The notes under the pieces: generated by a model
What the model saw: the letters and a program-made list of their open reading frames with translations, nothing else
What the model was told of the DNA's origin: nothing
Databases searched by the model: none
Made by a program: the position numbers and the translations under genes
Origin: Mytilus edulis
Lineage: Eukaryota
Length of the DNA stretch: 64,000 nt
NCBI RefSeq assembly: GCF_963676685.1
Contig: NC_092345.1
Coordinates: forward strand, 86,676,001-86,740,000
Reading direction: 5' to 3'
Shown here: positions 55,217 through 63,398 of the stretch, one piece after another
How positions within the stretch are numbered: the first letter of the stretch is position 1
How the letters are laid out: each line of letters starts with the position of its first letter

Positions 55217-58200
55217 GTAAGTAATAATCAGTTTACTCGTTTTAACAATTATGACCTATGTAAACATTAGACCGTTAGTTTTCTCGTTTGAATGGTTTTA
55301 CACTAATAATTTTGGAGCCCTTTATAGCTTGCGTGTTGAAGGCCGTACATTGACCTATAATTGTTTACTTTAACAAATTGTTATTTGGATGGAGAGTTGT
55401 TTCATTGGCACTCGTACCACATCTTCCTATATCTATATACGTAAATATATGTAACAAGAACCCAACGCGTAGTACTGTTTGTTCTGTTCAGATCATTTAT
55501 GTACTTACAAATGTTTGATGTATTAAGTATTCTAAATTTTTGGTCTAATAAATACCTGTTGAATGTTTGCCTGGCGCCGTTCTGGTGTTTAAGCTATTCC
55601 ATTGAAGTTACCAGCAAACTGTACTCCCGAATAGGCAACTATTCTCAATTGACAGTTTACATTTGTCTATCCTTTATAAGACACAGTTACAAAATCTTAA
55701 TTTAACACGATTATTTAATGATCAATACCATTGTCTTTGAAATTCGAGAATAATGAGTGTAACAATATGAAAAAAGTAAAATAACAAACATACCGAACTG
55801 CGGGGAAATTCTAAACGGAAAGCTCATAGCAAAATGCAAAATCTAAAGCTCAAACACATCAAATGAAGGGATAACAACTGTCAAATTCCTGACTTTGTAC
55901 GTACATTTTCTGATGTAAAAAATGGTGGAATAAACATAGTATTTTAGTAAGCTAAACCTTTAACATGTATCACAGTCGCATTACAACTCCATAATATTGA
56001 CAACGATTTGTGAACAAAACAAACAGACAATCACATAATATGCAAAATGTTAAAAATAGGGGTACCCCTTTATGTTTAAAATATAACGAAATAATATACA
56101 GGATATCAACAAAAAAAATCCTCAAAAAGATAAGAGGTTTATAATTTTGAAATAAGCTTTGCTTTTTATTTGGTAATATCTCTGTATTTTTTATGACAAT
56201 AAAATTAAAATCAAGGTAGTTGACATTGCGATTCGAATAGGCAAATTTGTTCCTACATTGTGGTATTAGTACCAATGAGACAACTCTCCATACAAGTCAC
56301 AATTTTTAAAGTAAACCATTATAGGACAAAGTACGGTCTTCAACACGGAGCCCTGGCTCACACCGCACAGCTATAAAGGGTCTCAAAAAATTACTAGTGT
56401 AAAACCATTCAAACGGGAAAAAAACAACGGTCTAATCTATATAATAAAAAAAAAACGGGAAACGAGAAACACTTATGAACCACATCAACAAACGAAAACT
56501 ACTGAACATCAGATTCCGGACTTAGGACAAACGATTAAATGGGGTTAAACGTTTAAATGGTATCAAACCTTCAAACTTATCTGAAATTATAGTGAAACTT
56601 CACAACATAGAAAGAAACATTATAAAATGTCAATTGAAAAGGCTTAAATATCAATTGTTAATGTCTGTGTCATTTTGGTCTCTTGTGGACAGTTGTCTCA
56701 TTGGCAATCATACCACATCTTCTTTTTTTATATTAACTCAATCAAAAGACATATTAACATATTTGAACATACACTGAACGTATAAATATGATCTATGATA
56801 CAATTTAAATACAAAATCAATAAAATAAGGGATGAATAATTAGAGTAATTTAAGTATTTTACACTTTGAAATGTAAAACAATTTCATAAAAAACAACAGT
56901 AAACTTTAACCAAAATTCGCCATTTGCAATAATATTATACACATGTAATTGAAAATAATTTTGTTTTTAGGTATACTGTTTGAAAGGAGAAATGAAGTAT
57001 TCTTACAAAATAAATAGTTTTGAAAAAGAAGTGAAAATTAAAAAAAATATCAAACACTTATCAAAGCTGGTATACAGACTAGATATAACCTTGAATAAAT
57101 AAACATTAAATAACAAAAAAGCATTAATAGATAAAAATGAACGTGGGTGTGGTTTATACATCCCGTTAGAAAAGAATACAAATTTAGTTATGTTTTAATT
57201 TGCTGACGACAAAATCGATATAGTATTGTTTATATAAAGTAGCAACTTTACCTGACCATATAGGAAAATAGGTATTTAGTCGGATCTTAACACGTACTTG
57301 TGATTTGGTTAAAGGTGGCACGGTAGTATTTCCTGGCCCATAGGGATAATGATAGCCTTTTTAGAATTTTCACCACTTTCTAACACTGCAAAAAAATCTA
57401 CACTCACACTTAACTGAAGTACTTTCATTTTACTATTCAGAAATGAATTTTAATATGTATCATGACCGTTTACTTTTTTTGCTATTTTTAGAAACCTAAG
57501 GCCACTAGTAATTTTAGGTCTTTTATGGTGCAGTGAATACAAAATTTAAAAAAATTCTCAAAAATTCATTTTCATCTGTATGTAAAATTATTTCATATTT
57601 TTCTACACCTGATTCATCCCTCAGTTTGGGAAAGTATGTTCAGTTGATACTGTATTTTTTGTCCAATCACACTGTTTAGATACATTTACCTAAGTAGGGT
57701 ACACAAAAGAGCAACCTAAATTTTGGAATGCAAATACTACCGTGCCACCTTAACCAAGACATAACAAACTTGAAACCAGTCATGACACCTATGATGCATA
57801 GACTTCTTACTTTGGAACATATTACAATAAAGAATACTAGTCTGCACTCATTTCTTATAAAAAAAAATGAAACATTACATCCCTACCCCATCTGGCAGAT
57901 TTTCACTTTTTTTCATCTTACCATTTTTACTTAAGAAGTGAACAAAACCCAAATATATGATGTTTCAAATCAACACAGATGTCAAACATTGTGATTTAGG
58001 AGGAATTATTGGATTGCCAACTCTGTTTATGGTTAATCTGAGTAAAAGAAACAGTTTAATCACCAAATCATGAAAACTGATATTAAAGTCCATTCCACAT
58101 TTTACAGCATGCCTTACATTACTTTAAACATTTTCAGATTATGAGGGCAATACAACAAGAGTCTTTAGATTGCAGTTAACTATTATTCCGTAACCTGTTT

Positions 58201-61200
58201 GACAATACATGTACTAGAATACATCTCTAAGTTGACTGTTTGTCTATTTCTCATGTATGCATTAAGTTAAATTATGTCCCCTTACATAATCAATTTGCAT
58301 TTATTGTGCTTTTCACTGTCAGAAAATCTTAACAACTAATGGTATTTGCATGGAAAATGAATAAACCATTTAATCTTGCTGATATAGCATCATAAATACA
58401 TTCTTTGTCAAAAATAATGTCTATTCAATGTACAGAAACCCCTATTTCTATCTCTATTTCATACCAATATGAGAGCTAAATGAATAAGTAAGGACCCCTT
58501 AACCACTTACTGGTTCCCCAAAAGCTCCTACTGGTGTCATGTAACATCAGAACTACTAATTAAACCTTAAGAAAGCTAGTATAGCTGTACTTATGTTGAA
58601 AAAAATAAGAAATTATGCAATTTATTTATTTCGGTGAAAATAATAGGATGAACATGCAACCGTAGAATGTCGCGTCTCAAATTTCAGTGGTTGCACATGT
58701 GTCAGACACTGCGAAAAGTTAAAGCGAGCATTTATAATTAAAAATGTATTGCAAGTTACATAAAAATAATGAAGTTCTACTTTCTATGAAAATTTTTACA
58801 TTATTACCTACAGATCAGGCAAAATTTGCTGAATCAGCAATTTTTACTCTCTGGGGTGGAATTTAAGGCTTGTTTTATCATAGTTGCCCTTCATCAACTT
58901 TTTATTGATAAACTTACAAATTGCATAGGTAAAAAAAGTTCCTTCATTGATTTAGTGTAAAAATATATATCCCCCTTAAGGTGGCACGGTAGTATTTCCT
59001 GGCCCATAGGGATAATGATAGCCTTTTTAGAATTTTCACCACTTTCTAACACTGCAAAAAAATCTACACTCACACTTAACTGAAGTACTTTCATTTTACT
59101 ATTCAGAAATGAATTTTAATATGTATCATGACCGTTTACTTTTTTTGCTATTTTTAGAAACCTAAGGCCACTAGTAATTTTAGGTCTTTTATGGTGCAGT
59201 GAATACAAAATTTAATAAAATTCTCAAAAATTCATTTTCATCTGTATGTAAAATTATTTCATATTTTTCTACACCTGATTCATCCCTCAGTTTGGGAAAG
59301 TATGTTCAGTTGATACTGTATTTTTTGTCCAATCACACTGTTTAGATACATTTACCTAAGTAGGGTACACAAAAGAGCAACCTAAATTTTGGAATGCAAA
59401 TACTACCGTGCCACCTAAAACCGGTTTTGTTCAAAATATACGAAGAAATGTCGAAATGTTCAGGACTAAATTAAATCCGTATTTCGGTAGGATGGTGCAA
59501 GCATACGATTTTTATTGCGTCTTACACTTTGAGAAGCGAATAATCTTCAACTACTTTATTCAAATATTGTGTAAAAACGTTAATTTTGAGCTATGAAAGT
59601 CAAGTGGCTCAGTTTTTTTCTGAGGAAGTTTTAAAAAATTGCAAAGAAATATTTTTACATTGGGTTAGCTTTCATTAGTCTTAACTATCTATAGATTAAC
59701 AACTTTTGGTTATATTTATAATTTAAAATCATCATTGAAGGTGGGGGACGATTTCGCAGATAATTAATTATATTGATGTGCCATTTGTATGCAAGAGTGA
59801 CATTTCGTTGTATTATGTGCCAATTCGAAAAAAGTTATGCGAGTATTCTCTCCCCTTAACAGGTTCATTATTTTATAATTAAGTTTAGGTTTCTGATATA
59901 ATTTTGAATAATTACAAAATGTATCAATTCAATATATTTCAGTTTGTGTTATTGGTGTATCAAAAACATTGATGTACGAATATAATTTCATAAATTTGAA
60001 ACGTTTAAAATGATTACATACCAATATAAAGAACCGTTCATCATTTTTGAAAAAGACTATGAACGAAAATCGAGTTATTTATCTTCCCTTGGTGACAGAT
60101 TGATTGGGAAATGAACCAGCGTAATATAATGGTAATTTTTAATTGTAGCTTATTCAACGTTAAAACAATTTTCCAATATAAACGAATGTTACTTTATACT
60201 AATATAAGGACTTTGTTAGCTAAATCTACAAATTTTATTAGATATTATAATTTTTTATTGCAATAGATTAATATGCTATATAAAGAGTTCATTTTGATCG
60301 AATGAACAAATATACGTTGACAACCATCTGTGAAATGCCAAAATAACTTGTTCAACTGAAATATTTACAAGTATAAACAGATGCATTTTTCTATTTGGGT
60401 TGATCTTCAAATTAGCAGTTTGACGTAGACATTATATGTTCAATTCAATTCAGTTTTATTTAAATTCGATATTTAATAAACTATATAAAAACAAGCTCTG
60501 GTGAGTAATTCAAATTGACTAAATTTCAAAATGTGTACAAACATTCCCAGACTAAATCCATTGGATGTTGGATGTGTACTGATTGATAATTAAGTCTTAG
60601 ATCAATGATGTTTTTATTAGTTGTTATTGACTTTGAACTAGCTGTCACTAACTGTCAGTAACTGTGAGTACTCTCAGATCTATAATAAGTGTCTTTCTGT
60701 TGATGGATGTACAAGTACCCGGCCACGTCCACTCTGTGTTTTGTAAGATGTATATCTATTTGTATCTACCTGATTGTTGTAGCTTGATCTTAACTTCTTA
60801 TATAGTTCTGTTACACCACTGTCACAGGTAAGGGGGATCCCGTTAACATGTTTAACCCCGCAACATTCTGTATGTATGTGTCTATCCCTGTCTGGAGCCT
60901 TTAATTCAGTCGTTTGTTGCTGTTTTACATATTTGTTTTTTGTTCATTTTATTGTACATAAATTAGGCCGTTAGTTGTCTCGTTTGAATAGTTTTTACAT
61001 ATTTATTTCGGGACTTTTTATAAGTGAATAAGTGGTATGGGCTTTGCCCGATGTACTGTTACTTATTGTAGTTAATTTCTGTGTCATTTTGGTCTAATGT
61101 GAAGAGTTGTCTCATTTGCATTCATACCAATCAATCTATCCTCGCGAATCGTTTTTAATACCAGATCAGAAAGGATAGAGGAATCCAACTACAAAAGGAT

Positions 61201-63398
61201 AGGTAACGACGACGGGTGAAACTACGTTAAATGAGATAGGTATAATGAGGTGGAGAGTCTAGTAAAATGTTAGAAATGGTAGTCGAAAATCTATTAATAC
61301 GGATAACAGAATAGGGGAGTAGTATTGCTTGACCTTTCCTATACTAGTATTTGTTAAAAATATAATACTCTTCAAATTCTTGCTGCTGAATTTGTTGGGA
61401 AATCACTTCTTGGTTTAGTTTACACTTCATATTTGAGTAGGTTAGTTACTTTTTGGTCTTTGGACATGATAAAAGGATGTGGGTGCTAATGAACTGATTT
61501 TTTTCTATGCAATCTAAAAAAAAATATAGGTTGCAACATCATGTACAGACGGTAGTATGCTGATTTCGAACTTGTTTAAAAAAAAAAAAGAGTAAATACT
61601 TTTTAAAATTACATCGGCAAATTCTTCTTAGTGTGATATCTAACTGTGAGACTTTGTAATACAAAACGGGCAATTTAAATCATACATCAGCAACAACAAA
61701 AAACAATGAATAATGCGTTCAAAATTAAAAAAAATGTAAAAATAGCCCTTAAACAATAACGAAAATTAACAATCCCGATTTTTCAAAACATGATCATATA
61801 CAACCTGCACAAAACCAACTACTGCTCTTAATTGTGTCAGACTAGCCAGAAACGGAAGCAATTAGTATCTTGACTTAACAACCCTCTATTACTGTCATTC
61901 ATCTAGGTCAGGATTTATTTAAAACAATATCAATGTGCTTCCATCTGGGATTCATTTGTCATTTATATTTTAAAAAATAGATTCAAGTGAGGATTATGGT
62001 GTTTGTAAAGTGTATAATACGGATGACAACCTTCCAGAAATCGTTGATGGACACAGACAATGTATAAAATCTGAGATGAGCACCTTTTGTATTGAATGGA
62101 CCTGTCCAGACCCCGAATGTGACAATCCTACAAAACCAGAGACAGGATGCCCCTTCTGTCAAGGTATGTATAGAAAATCATGTAATGTATCATATATGCA
62201 TGCAAAAATAATGTTTCGACAGTACTAGAGACATGTGTTCTAAAATACTATGTTAACATAATTTACCCCAAAAAAATCATTTCTTTCAGCTCAATGCTTA
62301 TGCGATTATTCTTCCGTACACAAGAAAGAATATGACCAATGCCATTGTCATATAAAAATCCGACACATATGTCTTCCTATCAAACGACGACGCTGCTGTA
62401 GACTATTTATTTAATGCTTTATAAACACAAAGGAAGAAGAGCTTTATAACCCAATTTTGTGTACAGATTCCTTATGATTTGAAATATTTTATTAGCATTT
62501 TCCCCGTGCTCTATAGGTTAACAATGATAGCTGGGCTGTTAAATATTGGGAAGGCGTATATGTCCATCAGACAGAGTTTAACTGACTTTTACAGCATTTC
62601 ATAATTATTGATCAACATAAACATTTGTGAATAGATAGGTTTTATATACATTTTTGTTAAGGGGCCAGGTGAAGTTCGTCTCCGGTGCGGTTGTTTCTAG
62701 CTGTATTGAAGACCCATCGGTGGCCTTCGACTGTTTTCTGCTCTTTGTTCTGGTTGTTGTCTCTTTGACACATTCCCAATTTCCATTCTCAATTTTATTA
62801 TAACAGTTGTTATAAGTTATAATCTTTTTGTGGTATATAGAAGGATTACAAGGTGTAGATGTCGGTCTGTCAAGATTGCAATGACCTTCATTTCAATGTA
62901 TGGTTCATTGAACAACAGAACGTTAAGCACTATTTACTACAAGTATATATGGTCTTAAAGACTATAGATTCATTGGTGTGTCGACATTACCGTCTAATAG
63001 TTTATATGTCAACTATTTTCGAAATACAGTTTGTAACTATTTTCGAAATTAAAGGCATAGTATGATGTATCATAGTTCTGTCTGGCGCTGATCACCTGAC
63101 CTCACCTCATTTTAGATACTACATTGTACATATATGTTGTCAAATATGATAATTATCTTATGTTTTAACTTTTCGCTTCATATATATACGTTATGGTAAA
63201 AGTGTTAGTGCTTATCATATGTTTCCTTTTTTAGGAGACTGCAGTTATGGCGGTAAAATATACAAAGAGAGAGAATCCTTCCCATGTGTGGACAACGTCA
63301 ATACCTGTCACTGTCTGGCAGGGGGTGTTATTGGATCATCATTAATTGCAGTAAATCCAGAATATATGTGTACCGCAAAGTTAGATAAATTATCATAA
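55159..63398 (+). CDS. Secreted cysteine-rich protein, 134 aa, with degenerate VWC/pacifastin-like modules; 3 coding exons
   Basis: join(55159-55216,61981-62163,63235-63398) = 405 nt, phase 1-1 GT-AG introns, open frame: MQFKLTTLVLFQLILVCSTYSSEDYGVCKVYNTDDNLPEIVDGHRQCIKSEMSTFCIEWTCPDPECDNPTKPETGCPFCQGDCSYGGKIYKERESFPCVDNVNTCHCLAGGVIGSSLIAVNPEYMCTAKLDKLS*. Confidence 0.85.
57314..57749. mobile_element. 436-bp Kolobok-like MITE, copy 1
   Basis: 18-bp perfect TIRs GGTGGCACGGTAGTATTT/AAATACTACCGTGCCACC; flanks TAAA (left) and TTAA (right). Confidence 0.93.
58980..59415. mobile_element. 436-bp Kolobok-like MITE, copy 2 (direct repeat of copy 1)
   Basis: Same TIRs and one substitution seen versus copy 1; flanks TTAA (left) and TAAA (right). 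Confidence 0.93.
61981..62163 (+). CDS. Cys-rich protein exon 2
   Basis: aatag| acceptor; 7 Cys ending CPFC; G|GTATGT donor. Confidence 0.87.
63235..63398 (+). CDS. Cys-rich protein exon 3
   Basis: tttttag| acceptor; CSYGGKIY...SFPCVDNVNTCHC; TAA stop. Confidence 0.87.

What the first reader, a model, noticed from the sequence alone, without database searches (positions are those of the whole stretch)
57310..59419. Apparent composite transposon: twin MITEs with swapped target-site duplications carrying 1.2 kb of cargo
Seen: two 436-bp MITEs in direct orientation, with one difference found by eye, bracket a 1.23-kb segment. Neither copy has matching flanks of its own (TAAA/TTAA and TTAA/TAAA). 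The outer flanks match each other (TAAA at 57310-57313 and 59416-59419) and the inner flanks are both TTAA. Established: GG..CC termini with TTAA targets typify Kolobok elements. Inference: the whole 2.1-kb unit entered intron 1 of the Cys-rich gene in one recent event using the outermost TIRs, like a bacterial IS-flanked composite transposon. An alternative is that a MITE-containing circle integrated by recombination or cointegration. Either route would let MITEs move ordinary genomic DNA.
Basis: partly seen in the sequence, partly recalled or inferred. Interest (0 to 1): 0.8.

Follow-up and report, generated by a model that had tools for sequence, protein, structure and literature searches.

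The report
Non-autonomous KolobokP transposon copy
The "twin MITEs carrying cargo" are one young, non-coding copy of KolobokP, a mussel DNA transposon type published in 2022 whose normal build is two long direct-repeat ends around an internal region, so it is a clean example of a known element and not a MITE pair capturing ordinary DNA.

Summary
Two 436-bp repeats, 435/436 identical and each with its own 18-bp inverted ends (GG..CC), bracket 1,222 bp. TTAA lies on both inner sides and TAAA on both outer sides.

The 2,102-bp unit sits 74 bp inside another young repeat. The whole unit is therefore an insertion with a 4-bp duplication.

It is not an ad hoc composite. The same repeat-internal-repeat unit occurs at many loci with matching 4-bp flanks: 15 of 15 long elements paired on chromosomes 1-7. 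It also occurs as solo repeats, as tandem multimers with a 1,666-bp period, and as repeat-less internal-internal junctions holding a single TTAA.

This is the published architecture of KolobokP (Kojima & Bao 2022, PMC9587614), which is rich in Mytilus. The "cargo" is the family's own non-coding internal region. Targets are TNNA, not strictly TTAA. The autonomous partner was not identified.

The scan had already found KolobokP elsewhere in this genome.

One addition: inherited variants are always present in both end repeats of a copy, and one-sided variants are never shared between loci. The two ends therefore appear to derive from one template at insertion.

The parts
57240..57313 (+). 5' 74 bp of the host repeat R, into which the element inserted. 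Ends with the left copy of the TAAA duplication (57310-57313).
   Evidence: four paralogues (L047-L050) align from TAGCAACTTTACC through gatttggtTAAA and continue straight into accggtttt; the last ~90 bp of the left flank had no match among the 40 candidates scored.
57314..57749 (+). Termini GG...CC.
   Evidence: three non-consensus bases (57403 C, 57451 T, 57723 T) are shared with the right LTDR.
57750..58979 (+). Non-coding.
   Evidence: at least 494 first-look candidates genome-wide; no ORF above 68 aa and no Pfam or Rfam match. INT-INT junctions elsewhere hold a single TTAA.
58980..59415 (+). Differs from the left LTDR only at 59216 (T versus A).
59416..59419 (.). Right copy of the 4-bp target-site duplication TAAA.
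   Evidence: TAAA is single in the paralogous empty sites.
59416..60000 (+). Continuation of host repeat R. Its 3' end was not mapped. It is 98-99% identical to many other copies.
   Evidence: 680 first-look candidates, and most scored hits start at query base 1..

Best explanation
This is one monomer of a non-autonomous KolobokP DNA transposon. It has a 436-bp left LTDR, a 1,230-bp non-coding internal region that starts and ends with TTAA, and an identical-type right LTDR.

Shown: it is inserted as a 2,102-bp unit. The insertion made a 4-bp TAAA duplication 74 bp inside a young interspersed repeat.

Inferred: a KolobokP DDE transposase supplied in trans by an autonomous relative acted on the two outermost inverted ends. 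The genome carries many transposase plus His-Me nuclease units.

The same family also occurs as:
- solo LTDRs, which arise by LTDR transposition or by LTDR-LTDR recombination;
- (LTDR-INT)n-LTDR multimers, which arise by unequal crossover;
- LTDR-less INT-INT junctions, which arise by LTDR excision.

Both LTDRs of a copy carry the same inherited variants. New copies therefore probably come from a donor whose two LTDRs were clonal. That donor could be an interior unit of a homogeneous multimer or a one-LTDR intermediate. This last step is inference.
For: Anatomy of the window copy.

Empty site: four paralogues of the host repeat hold a single TAAA.

The unit is a family, not a one-off:
- 1,666-bp-period arrays and dispersed LTDR-INT-LTDR copies, all bounded by LTDRs.
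- Pairing of left and right ends on chromosomes 1-7 gave 41 solo pairs, 36 with identical 4-bp flanks.
- The same pairing gave 15 long elements, all 15 with identical flanks.
- Nine fetched monomers all have perfect 4-bp duplications.
- INT-INT junctions hold one TTAA (X2 contig).

Match to the published KolobokP description (PMC9587614):
- LTDR of about 450 bp with its own 11-18-bp inverted ends.
- RR..YY termini.
- 4-bp duplications in the Mytilus families.
- Solo LTDRs, multimers and LTDR-(INT)n-LTDR with one tetranucleotide at the junction.
- Non-autonomous families of 1.7-3.3 kb.
- The terminal 8-mer GGTGGCAC/GTGCCACC recurs at the ends of published KolobokP LTDRs.

Possible source of transposase: the genome holds at least 150 His-Me nuclease ORFs, many in 3.6-4.8-kb tandem units. 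One such unit encodes a 584-aa DDE transposase (PF20700, E = 2e-48) on the strand opposite the nuclease.

LTDR variants in 19 copies: 62 + 38 symmetric, 62 one-sided, and none of the one-sided variants is shared between loci.
Against: - No autonomous element with these LTDRs or this 13-bp terminus was found. One search gave only 16 hits, mostly mutated copies of the same LTDR. The one autonomous unit fetched shares no nucleotide similarity with the LTDR or the INT.
- The exact family was not found in the paper's supplementary text as held, which is cut and machine-read.
- At 436 bp the LTDR is slightly below the 445-480 bp seen for the listed families.
- No long reads were available to confirm the assembly.
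- Four of the first ten arrays examined have non-matching outer flanks. Recombination or rearrangement therefore also shapes these loci.
Confidence: 0.85

Rival explanations
1. A solo LTDR first inserted at TAAA. An extrachromosomal LTDR-INT circle then recombined homologously with it. This is Kojima & Bao's Fig. 5b1 and the reader's circle alternative. It rebuilds LTDR-INT-LTDR with the old duplication.
For: It yields the observed structure. Solo LTDRs with duplications are abundant. INT ends are found joined through one TTAA. One-unit circles are the expected product of LTDR-LTDR recombination. The model is published.
Against: A single crossover gives chimeric LTDRs, so a variant carried by only one partner ends up in one LTDR. 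Here three non-consensus bases at LTDR positions 90, 138 and 410 are in both LTDRs. The 62-mer carrying the first two occurs nowhere else in the assembly. Across 19 copies no one-sided variant is shared between loci on the same side. The INT-INT junctions seen are chromosomal tandem junctions and are not proof of circles.
Confidence: 0.1
2. One reading: two independent MITE insertions happened to flank 1.2 kb of ordinary genomic DNA at a donor locus, and the pair then moved it as a bacterial-style composite transposon.
For: The outermost ends plus a matching TAAA duplication and the empty site show unit insertion. The LTDR can exist alone with its own duplication.
Against: The 'cargo' is itself a high-copy family component with fixed boundaries, found in every fetched copy, including old subfamilies whose INT is only 87-95% identical. 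The layout is the conserved architecture of a lineage found in 7 phyla. Independently inherited MITEs would pass on left/right differences, and none is seen.
Confidence: 0.03
3. An LTR-type retroelement (TRIM/LARD-like). The 436-bp repeats are LTRs made identical by reverse transcription, and the solo copies are solo LTRs.
For: Direct terminal repeats that are identical at insertion and then diverge like a clock. A 4-bp duplication. Many solo repeats and tandem repeat-internal arrays, as reported for TRIMs, including biv-TRIM.
Against: - Termini are GG..CC with an 18-bp perfect inverted repeat, not TG..CA.
- No TGG-type primer-binding site follows the 5' repeat and no purine tract precedes the 3' repeat, on either strand (read).
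- Internal-internal junctions that lack the repeat and hold exactly one TTAA fit excision or insertion of a duplication-making DNA element, not LTR recombination.
- M-c-c-M copies exist.
- The terminal 8-mer matches published KolobokP LTDR ends.
Confidence: 0.02
4. Assembly artefact: a solo repeat or a longer array was wrongly collapsed or expanded to two repeats here.
For: Repeats of 99% identity are hard to assemble. No long reads could be laid.
Against: The two LTDRs and the INT carry locus-private bases absent from the rest of the assembly, and the LTDRs differ from each other at one site. Many independent loci have the same monomer structure.
Confidence: 0.03

Closest known systems
KolobokP (Kolobok superfamily DNA transposons with paired long terminal direct repeats; Kojima & Bao 2022, Mob DNA 13:24, PMC9587614)
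   Same: - LTDR-INT-LTDR build, with an LTDR of about 450 bp that carries its own short inverted ends.
- RR..YY termini and a 4-bp duplication.
- Solo LTDRs, (LTDR-INT)n-LTDR multimers, and LTDR-(INT)n-LTDR with a single tetranucleotide at INT-INT junctions.
- Non-autonomous derivatives of about 2 kb.
- Abundance in Mytilus.
- Terminal GGTGGCAC motif shared with some published LTDRs.
   Different: - This family (436-bp LTDR, 1,230-bp INT with TTAA tips) was not found in the held supplement.
- It encodes neither transposase nor His-Me nuclease, and its autonomous partner was not identified.
- Very long INT-only arrays and a 33-kb array exceed the sizes tabulated in the paper.
Canonical Kolobok elements (TTAA-specific)
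   Same: GG..CC (RR..YY) termini, a 4-bp duplication, and TTAA among the targets.
   Different: Targets here are TNNA (TATA, then TGTA and TAAA equally, then TACA). Long direct terminal repeats replace simple inverted ends.
Bacterial composite transposons and IS26 translocatable units; maize Ac/Ds macrotransposons (from general knowledge)
   Same: Two complete mobile end-modules in direct orientation move the DNA between them. The duplication flanks the whole unit. Each end-module can also act alone.
   Different: Here the arrangement is the heritable, conserved design of a lineage and not an opportunistic pairing. The internal DNA is the element's own. The end-modules of a copy share all inherited variants.
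TRIM/LARD non-autonomous LTR retrotransposons, including biv-TRIM (PMC6934838)
   Same: Direct terminal repeats identical at insertion, solo repeats, tandem repeat-internal arrays, and a short duplication.
   Different: No TG..CA, no primer-binding site and no polypurine tract. 18-bp inverted ends. Precise repeat-less junctions. biv-TRIM has 202-218-bp repeats and a 77-80-bp core.

Membership tests
KolobokP | [quoted passage not shown] | tested here: met
   436-bp direct repeats, 435/436 identical, around 1,230 bp.
KolobokP | LTDR length of about 450 bp (or about 660 bp) | tested here: met
   436 bp. Mytilus families listed in Table S1 are 447-464 bp, so this is slightly short.
KolobokP | Each LTDR has its own short inverted ends (11-18 bp) with termini 5'-RR...YY-3' | tested here: met
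   18-bp perfect inverted ends, GG...CC. The terminal 8-mer also occurs at the ends of published LTDRs.
KolobokP | Short target-site duplication (3-5 bp; 4 bp in Mytilus families) around monomers, solo LTDRs and multimers | tested here: met
   TAAA here, with paralogous empty sites. 36 of 41 solo pairs and 15 of 15 long elements match. 9 of 9 fetched monomers match. One copy has a 5-bp duplication.
KolobokP | Family also occurs as solo LTDRs, as (LTDR-INT)n-LTDR, and as LTDR-(INT)n-LTDR with one tetranucleotide at INT-INT junctions | tested here: met
   arrays of 2 to at least 28 units, M-c-c-M, and a single TTAA at INT-INT junctions.
KolobokP | [quoted passage not shown] | tested here: inconclusive
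   Such two-gene units are abundant in this genome. None was linked to this LTDR: one search found no other family with this terminus, and one search found no similarity to the one unit fetched.
Canonical Kolobok | Strict TTAA target and duplication | tested here: not met
   Left flanks of exact LTDR ends: 178 T[ACG]NN, 436 TTAA (mostly internal to arrays) and 31 not starting with T. Outer duplications are mostly TATA, TGTA, TAAA and TACA.
LTR retrotransposon / TRIM | TG..CA repeat termini, a primer-binding site after the 5' repeat, and a polypurine tract before the 3' repeat | tested here: not met
   Read directly: GG..CC termini; TTAACCAAGACAT follows the 5' repeat and ATATATCCCCCTTAA precedes the 3' repeat. 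Neither strand has a TGG start or a purine run. No tRNA-complement search was run.
Ad hoc composite transposon (two independent MITEs plus captured host DNA) | Internal DNA is ordinary host sequence, and the end elements have independent histories | tested here: not met
   The INT is a fixed, high-copy family component. All inherited LTDR variants are symmetric.

The most novel reading that the evidence does not exclude
KolobokP copies may regenerate both long terminal repeats from a single template at each round of spread. One route is a one-LTDR circular LTDR-INT intermediate whose LTDR is duplicated on integration, like IS26 translocatable units or cointegrates. Another is obligate launch from the clonal interior of multimers. 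Either would give a eukaryotic cut-and-paste-type transposon an LTR-like 'two ends identical at birth' clock. The window copy, with 1 difference in 436 bp, would then be among the youngest insertions.
Probability: 0.3. Interest if true: 0.55.

Novelty: new member of a known kind. Interest (0 to 1): 0.25.

Why it matters
As a finding it mostly closes a question. What looked like MITEs capturing host DNA is the normal design of a published transposon lineage, so it is no evidence for MITE-mediated gene movement.

It has modest value as a clean, datable, non-autonomous KolobokP family with a verified empty site and hundreds of copies in all published structural states.

It is also a practical warning for annotators. 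In bivalves such units will be called as 'MITE + satellite + MITE' or as LTR-like elements.

Tried and rejected
- I first read the 1.2-kb unit as an older 1,226-bp satellite invaded by a MITE and then dispersed by composite transposition. I dropped this as the primary account once the KolobokP paper explained INT-INT junctions as LTDR excision. The order of events is still not proven.
- I considered the LTR/TRIM reading because of the identical ends. I rejected it on the termini, the missing primer-binding and polypurine signals, and the single-TTAA junctions.
- I searched the own genome with both flanks, looking for an alternative haplotig allele. None was found. Instead the right flank proved to be a repeat, which gave paralogous empty sites.
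- Reads were only short Logan contigs. The 'skips 2106' joint is seen in X15 and X2 but cannot be told apart from paralogues of the host repeat. There was therefore no allele test and no spanning-read test.
- The search for the autonomous partner failed by terminus pattern and by one fetched two-gene unit.
- The exact LTDR terminus is absent from the held supplement text.
- Pfam and Rfam scans on the element were blank.
Smaller later requests passed.
Full report
OBSERVATION

Two 436-bp direct repeats lie at 57314-57749 and 58980-59415, which I call M. They differ at one base (57550 A, 59216 T). Each has perfect 18-bp inverted ends (GGTGGCACGGTAGTATTT...) and GG..CC termini.

Between them lie 1,222 bp (57754-58975), which I call c, with TTAA on each side. 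TAAA lies on both outer sides (57310-57313 and 59416-59419).

IT IS AN INSERTION, AND THE EMPTY SITE EXISTS

The right flank from 59416 onwards is itself a young, high-copy repeat, R. One search gave 680 first-look candidates at 98-99% identity, most starting at query base 1.

I fetched four other R copies with their upstream sequence and aligned them. R starts at about 57240 in the window. The paralogues run uninterrupted through ...cttgtgatttggtTAAAaccggttttgttc....

IT IS A FAMILY, NOT A ONE-OFF

Searching the genome with M and with c gave these results:
- The 1,666-bp unit M+TTAA+c+TTAA is tandemly repeated, with at least 28 units at C4:8.54-8.59 Mb and more on unplaced C1121.
- c alone also forms 1,226-bp tandem repeats, c-TTAA-c, on unplaced contigs C887 and C373 and inside arrays. 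A Logan contig of run X2 has the same form.
- Dispersed chromosomal copies are always bounded by M. They occur as M-c-M, M-c-M-c-M, M-c-M-c-M-c-M and M-c-c-M.

I then used exact-pattern scans of the left end and the right end and paired them by coordinate on chromosomes 1-7:
- 41 solo M pairs, 36 with identical 4-bp flanks.
- 15 longer elements, all 15 with identical flanks.
- Eleven of the 15 are about 2.1-kb M-c-M.
- One is M-c-M-c-M.
- One is M-c-M with a 1.9-kb LINE-like insert in c.
- One is a 33-kb array.

Nine further monomers fetched all have perfect 4-bp duplications. Their c is only 87-99% identical to the window's. The unit with these exact boundaries is therefore old and has subfamilies.

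The target spectrum among flanks of exact left ends is:
- 178 T[ACG]NN (mostly TATA, TGTA, TAAA, TACA, TGAA);
- 436 TTAA (mostly internal to arrays);
- 31 not starting with T.

The target is therefore TNNA and not strictly TTAA.

WHAT IT IS

A literature search led to Kojima & Bao 2022 (PMC9587614). They describe KolobokP, a Kolobok lineage 'especially rich in bivalves', Mytilus included. Its features are:
- LTDRs of about 450 or about 660 bp, each with its own 11-18-bp inverted ends and RR..YY termini;
- duplications of 3-5 bp, 4 bp for the Mytilus families in Table S1;
- plentiful solo LTDRs and (LTDR-INT)n-LTDR multimers;
- LTDR-(INT)n-LTDR in which only one copy of the tetranucleotide that starts and ends the INT is present at the INT-INT junction. 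Their example is TATA; here it is TTAA;
- non-autonomous families of 1.7-3.3 kb.

Every structural feature is met here (see the membership table). The terminal 8-mer GGTGGCAC...GTGCCACC also occurs at the ends of published KolobokP LTDRs from other taxa.

The element is non-coding. It has no ORF above 68 aa and no Pfam or Rfam hit. It is therefore a non-autonomous copy.

The genome holds at least 150 His-Me nuclease ORFs (PF05551; 542 candidates), many in 3.6-4.8-kb tandem units. In the one unit I fetched, the nuclease lies opposite a 584-aa DDE transposase (PF20700, E = 2e-48). That is the two-gene KolobokP core.

I could not link a particular autonomous family to this LTDR. I also did not find this exact family in the held supplement, which is machine-read and partly cut. 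I therefore file it as a new member of a known kind.

Earlier notes of this scan (s1-836981, s1-832276, s1-838840) had already identified KolobokP elsewhere in this genome. Other notes (for example s1-834641) call the genome the blue mussel. I did not verify the species.

HOW THIS COPY GOT THERE

Shown: unit-length insertion with a TAAA duplication at a site that is empty in paralogues.

Inferred: transposase in trans acting on the outermost ends.

The alternative is a solo LTDR at TAAA that later recombined with an LTDR-INT circle. It predicts chimeric LTDRs in which a variant carried by only one partner sits in one LTDR.

The data do not fit that prediction. Both window LTDRs share three non-consensus bases (LTDR positions 90, 138 and 410). 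The 62-mer carrying the first two occurs only twice in the 1.37-Gb assembly, and both occurrences are the window's LTDRs. The window's c also has four private bases. Consensus letters replace all of these private bases in the four public runs laid.

AN ADDITION ON MECHANISM

I classified the variants in 19 copies that have at least two LTDRs:
- 62 non-consensus LTDR variants are present in both outer LTDRs and recur in other loci.
- 38 are in both LTDRs and private to one locus.
- 62 are one-sided.
- No one-sided variant recurs on the same side in a second locus.

One-sided differences range from 0 to about 12 per copy. They rise in the diverged subfamilies, so strong ongoing homogenisation is unlikely.

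The pattern is the one known from LTR pairs. The two ends of a new copy come from one template and then drift apart.

For a DNA transposon this argues against a plain composite whose two ends are inherited independently. It points to donors with clonal LTDRs. These could be interior units of homogeneous multimers, which abound here, or a one-LTDR intermediate with LTDR duplication. Nuclease-induced repair between LTDRs, as the paper proposes for multimerisation, could contribute.

My text search of the paper found no such analysis. I cannot exclude that it exists elsewhere.

LIMITS

- Only short Logan contigs were available. There was no spanning-read check of the assembly and no allele test. 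The 'skips 2106' joint in X15 and X2 is indistinguishable from R paralogues.
- Intron placement was not tested. A Cys-rich exon-like ORF lies at about 61990-62164 with a GT after it but has no Pfam hit.
- Four of the first ten arrays examined have unequal outer flanks, each with TTAA on one side. I did not explain this.

VERDICT

The striking claim, that MITEs move ordinary DNA, fails. The feature is an ordinary young copy of a known transposon type.

Noticed in passing
window 57240-57313 and 59416 to at least 60000: Host repeat R is a young interspersed repeat (680 first-look candidates, 98-99% identical) starting TAGCAACTTTACCTGACC. Its type and 3' end were not determined. No long ORF lies in 59416-62000.
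   Followed up: partly
19 loci: window, L031-L044, L051, L054-L062: All inherited LTDR variants are present in both end repeats of a copy (62 recurring + 38 private). The 62 one-sided variants are never shared between loci on the same side. This is an LTR-like 'identical at birth' signature in a DNA transposon.
   Followed up: yes
G000:C4:56216423-56249425: A 33-kb array of the same family has LTDRs spaced by 1 to about 10 internal units. It is bounded by LTDRs with identical TGTA flanks. It is either a very large unit insertion or in-situ growth with many LTDR losses.
   Followed up: no
G000:C1:10154610-10160634; C6:38600039-38603495; C3:75181394-75186030: The same LTDR end recurs at other tandem periods: 530 bp, 1,506 bp (each right flank TAAA) and about 2,305 bp. 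This suggests deletion or insertion derivatives of the internal region, or LTDR-plus-flank duplications.
   Followed up: no
C4:8.54 Mb, C3:36.72 Mb, C12:70.87 Mb, C9:19.54 Mb: Four arrays have unequal outer flanks (TGAA/TTAA, TTAA/TGCA, TTAA/TTTA, TGTA/TTAA). In each, one side is TTAA. Unexplained.
   Followed up: no
G000, e.g. C2:54190969-54231938, C7:17724404-17760369, C6:79990118-80021808, C8:81326715-81436310: His-Me nuclease ORFs (PF05551) lie in long tandem arrays of period 3.6-4.8 kb. The unit fetched (L053) also encodes a 584-aa PF20700 DDE transposase on the opposite strand. These are autonomous KolobokP multimers.
   Followed up: partly
L051 895-2775 (G000:C6:40685994-40687874): A 1,881-bp insert ending in an (ATT)n tail sits inside the internal region of another copy, with the 5 bp at c positions 411-415 present on both sides of it. 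It looks like a 5'-truncated non-LTR retrotransposon.
   Followed up: no
window 61990-62164: An exon-like ORF with many cysteines (...CIKSEMSTFCIEWTCPDPECDNPTKPETGCPFCQ) is followed by GT. It has no Pfam hit at E <= 1.
   Followed up: partly
window 55261-55426, 56259-56441, 56657-56722, 60897-61136: Another repeat family has long inverted arms: 52, 45 and 35 nt at 83-94% complementarity, 0.8-1.1 kb apart. A partial direct copy lies downstream. It looks like a separate foldback or MITE-like element.
   Followed up: no
Read-laying run X2 (organism B): A 1,259-bp contig wraps from the end of the internal region through one TTAA into its start. The LTDR-less INT-INT form therefore also exists in a run labelled as a different organism.
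   Followed up: no
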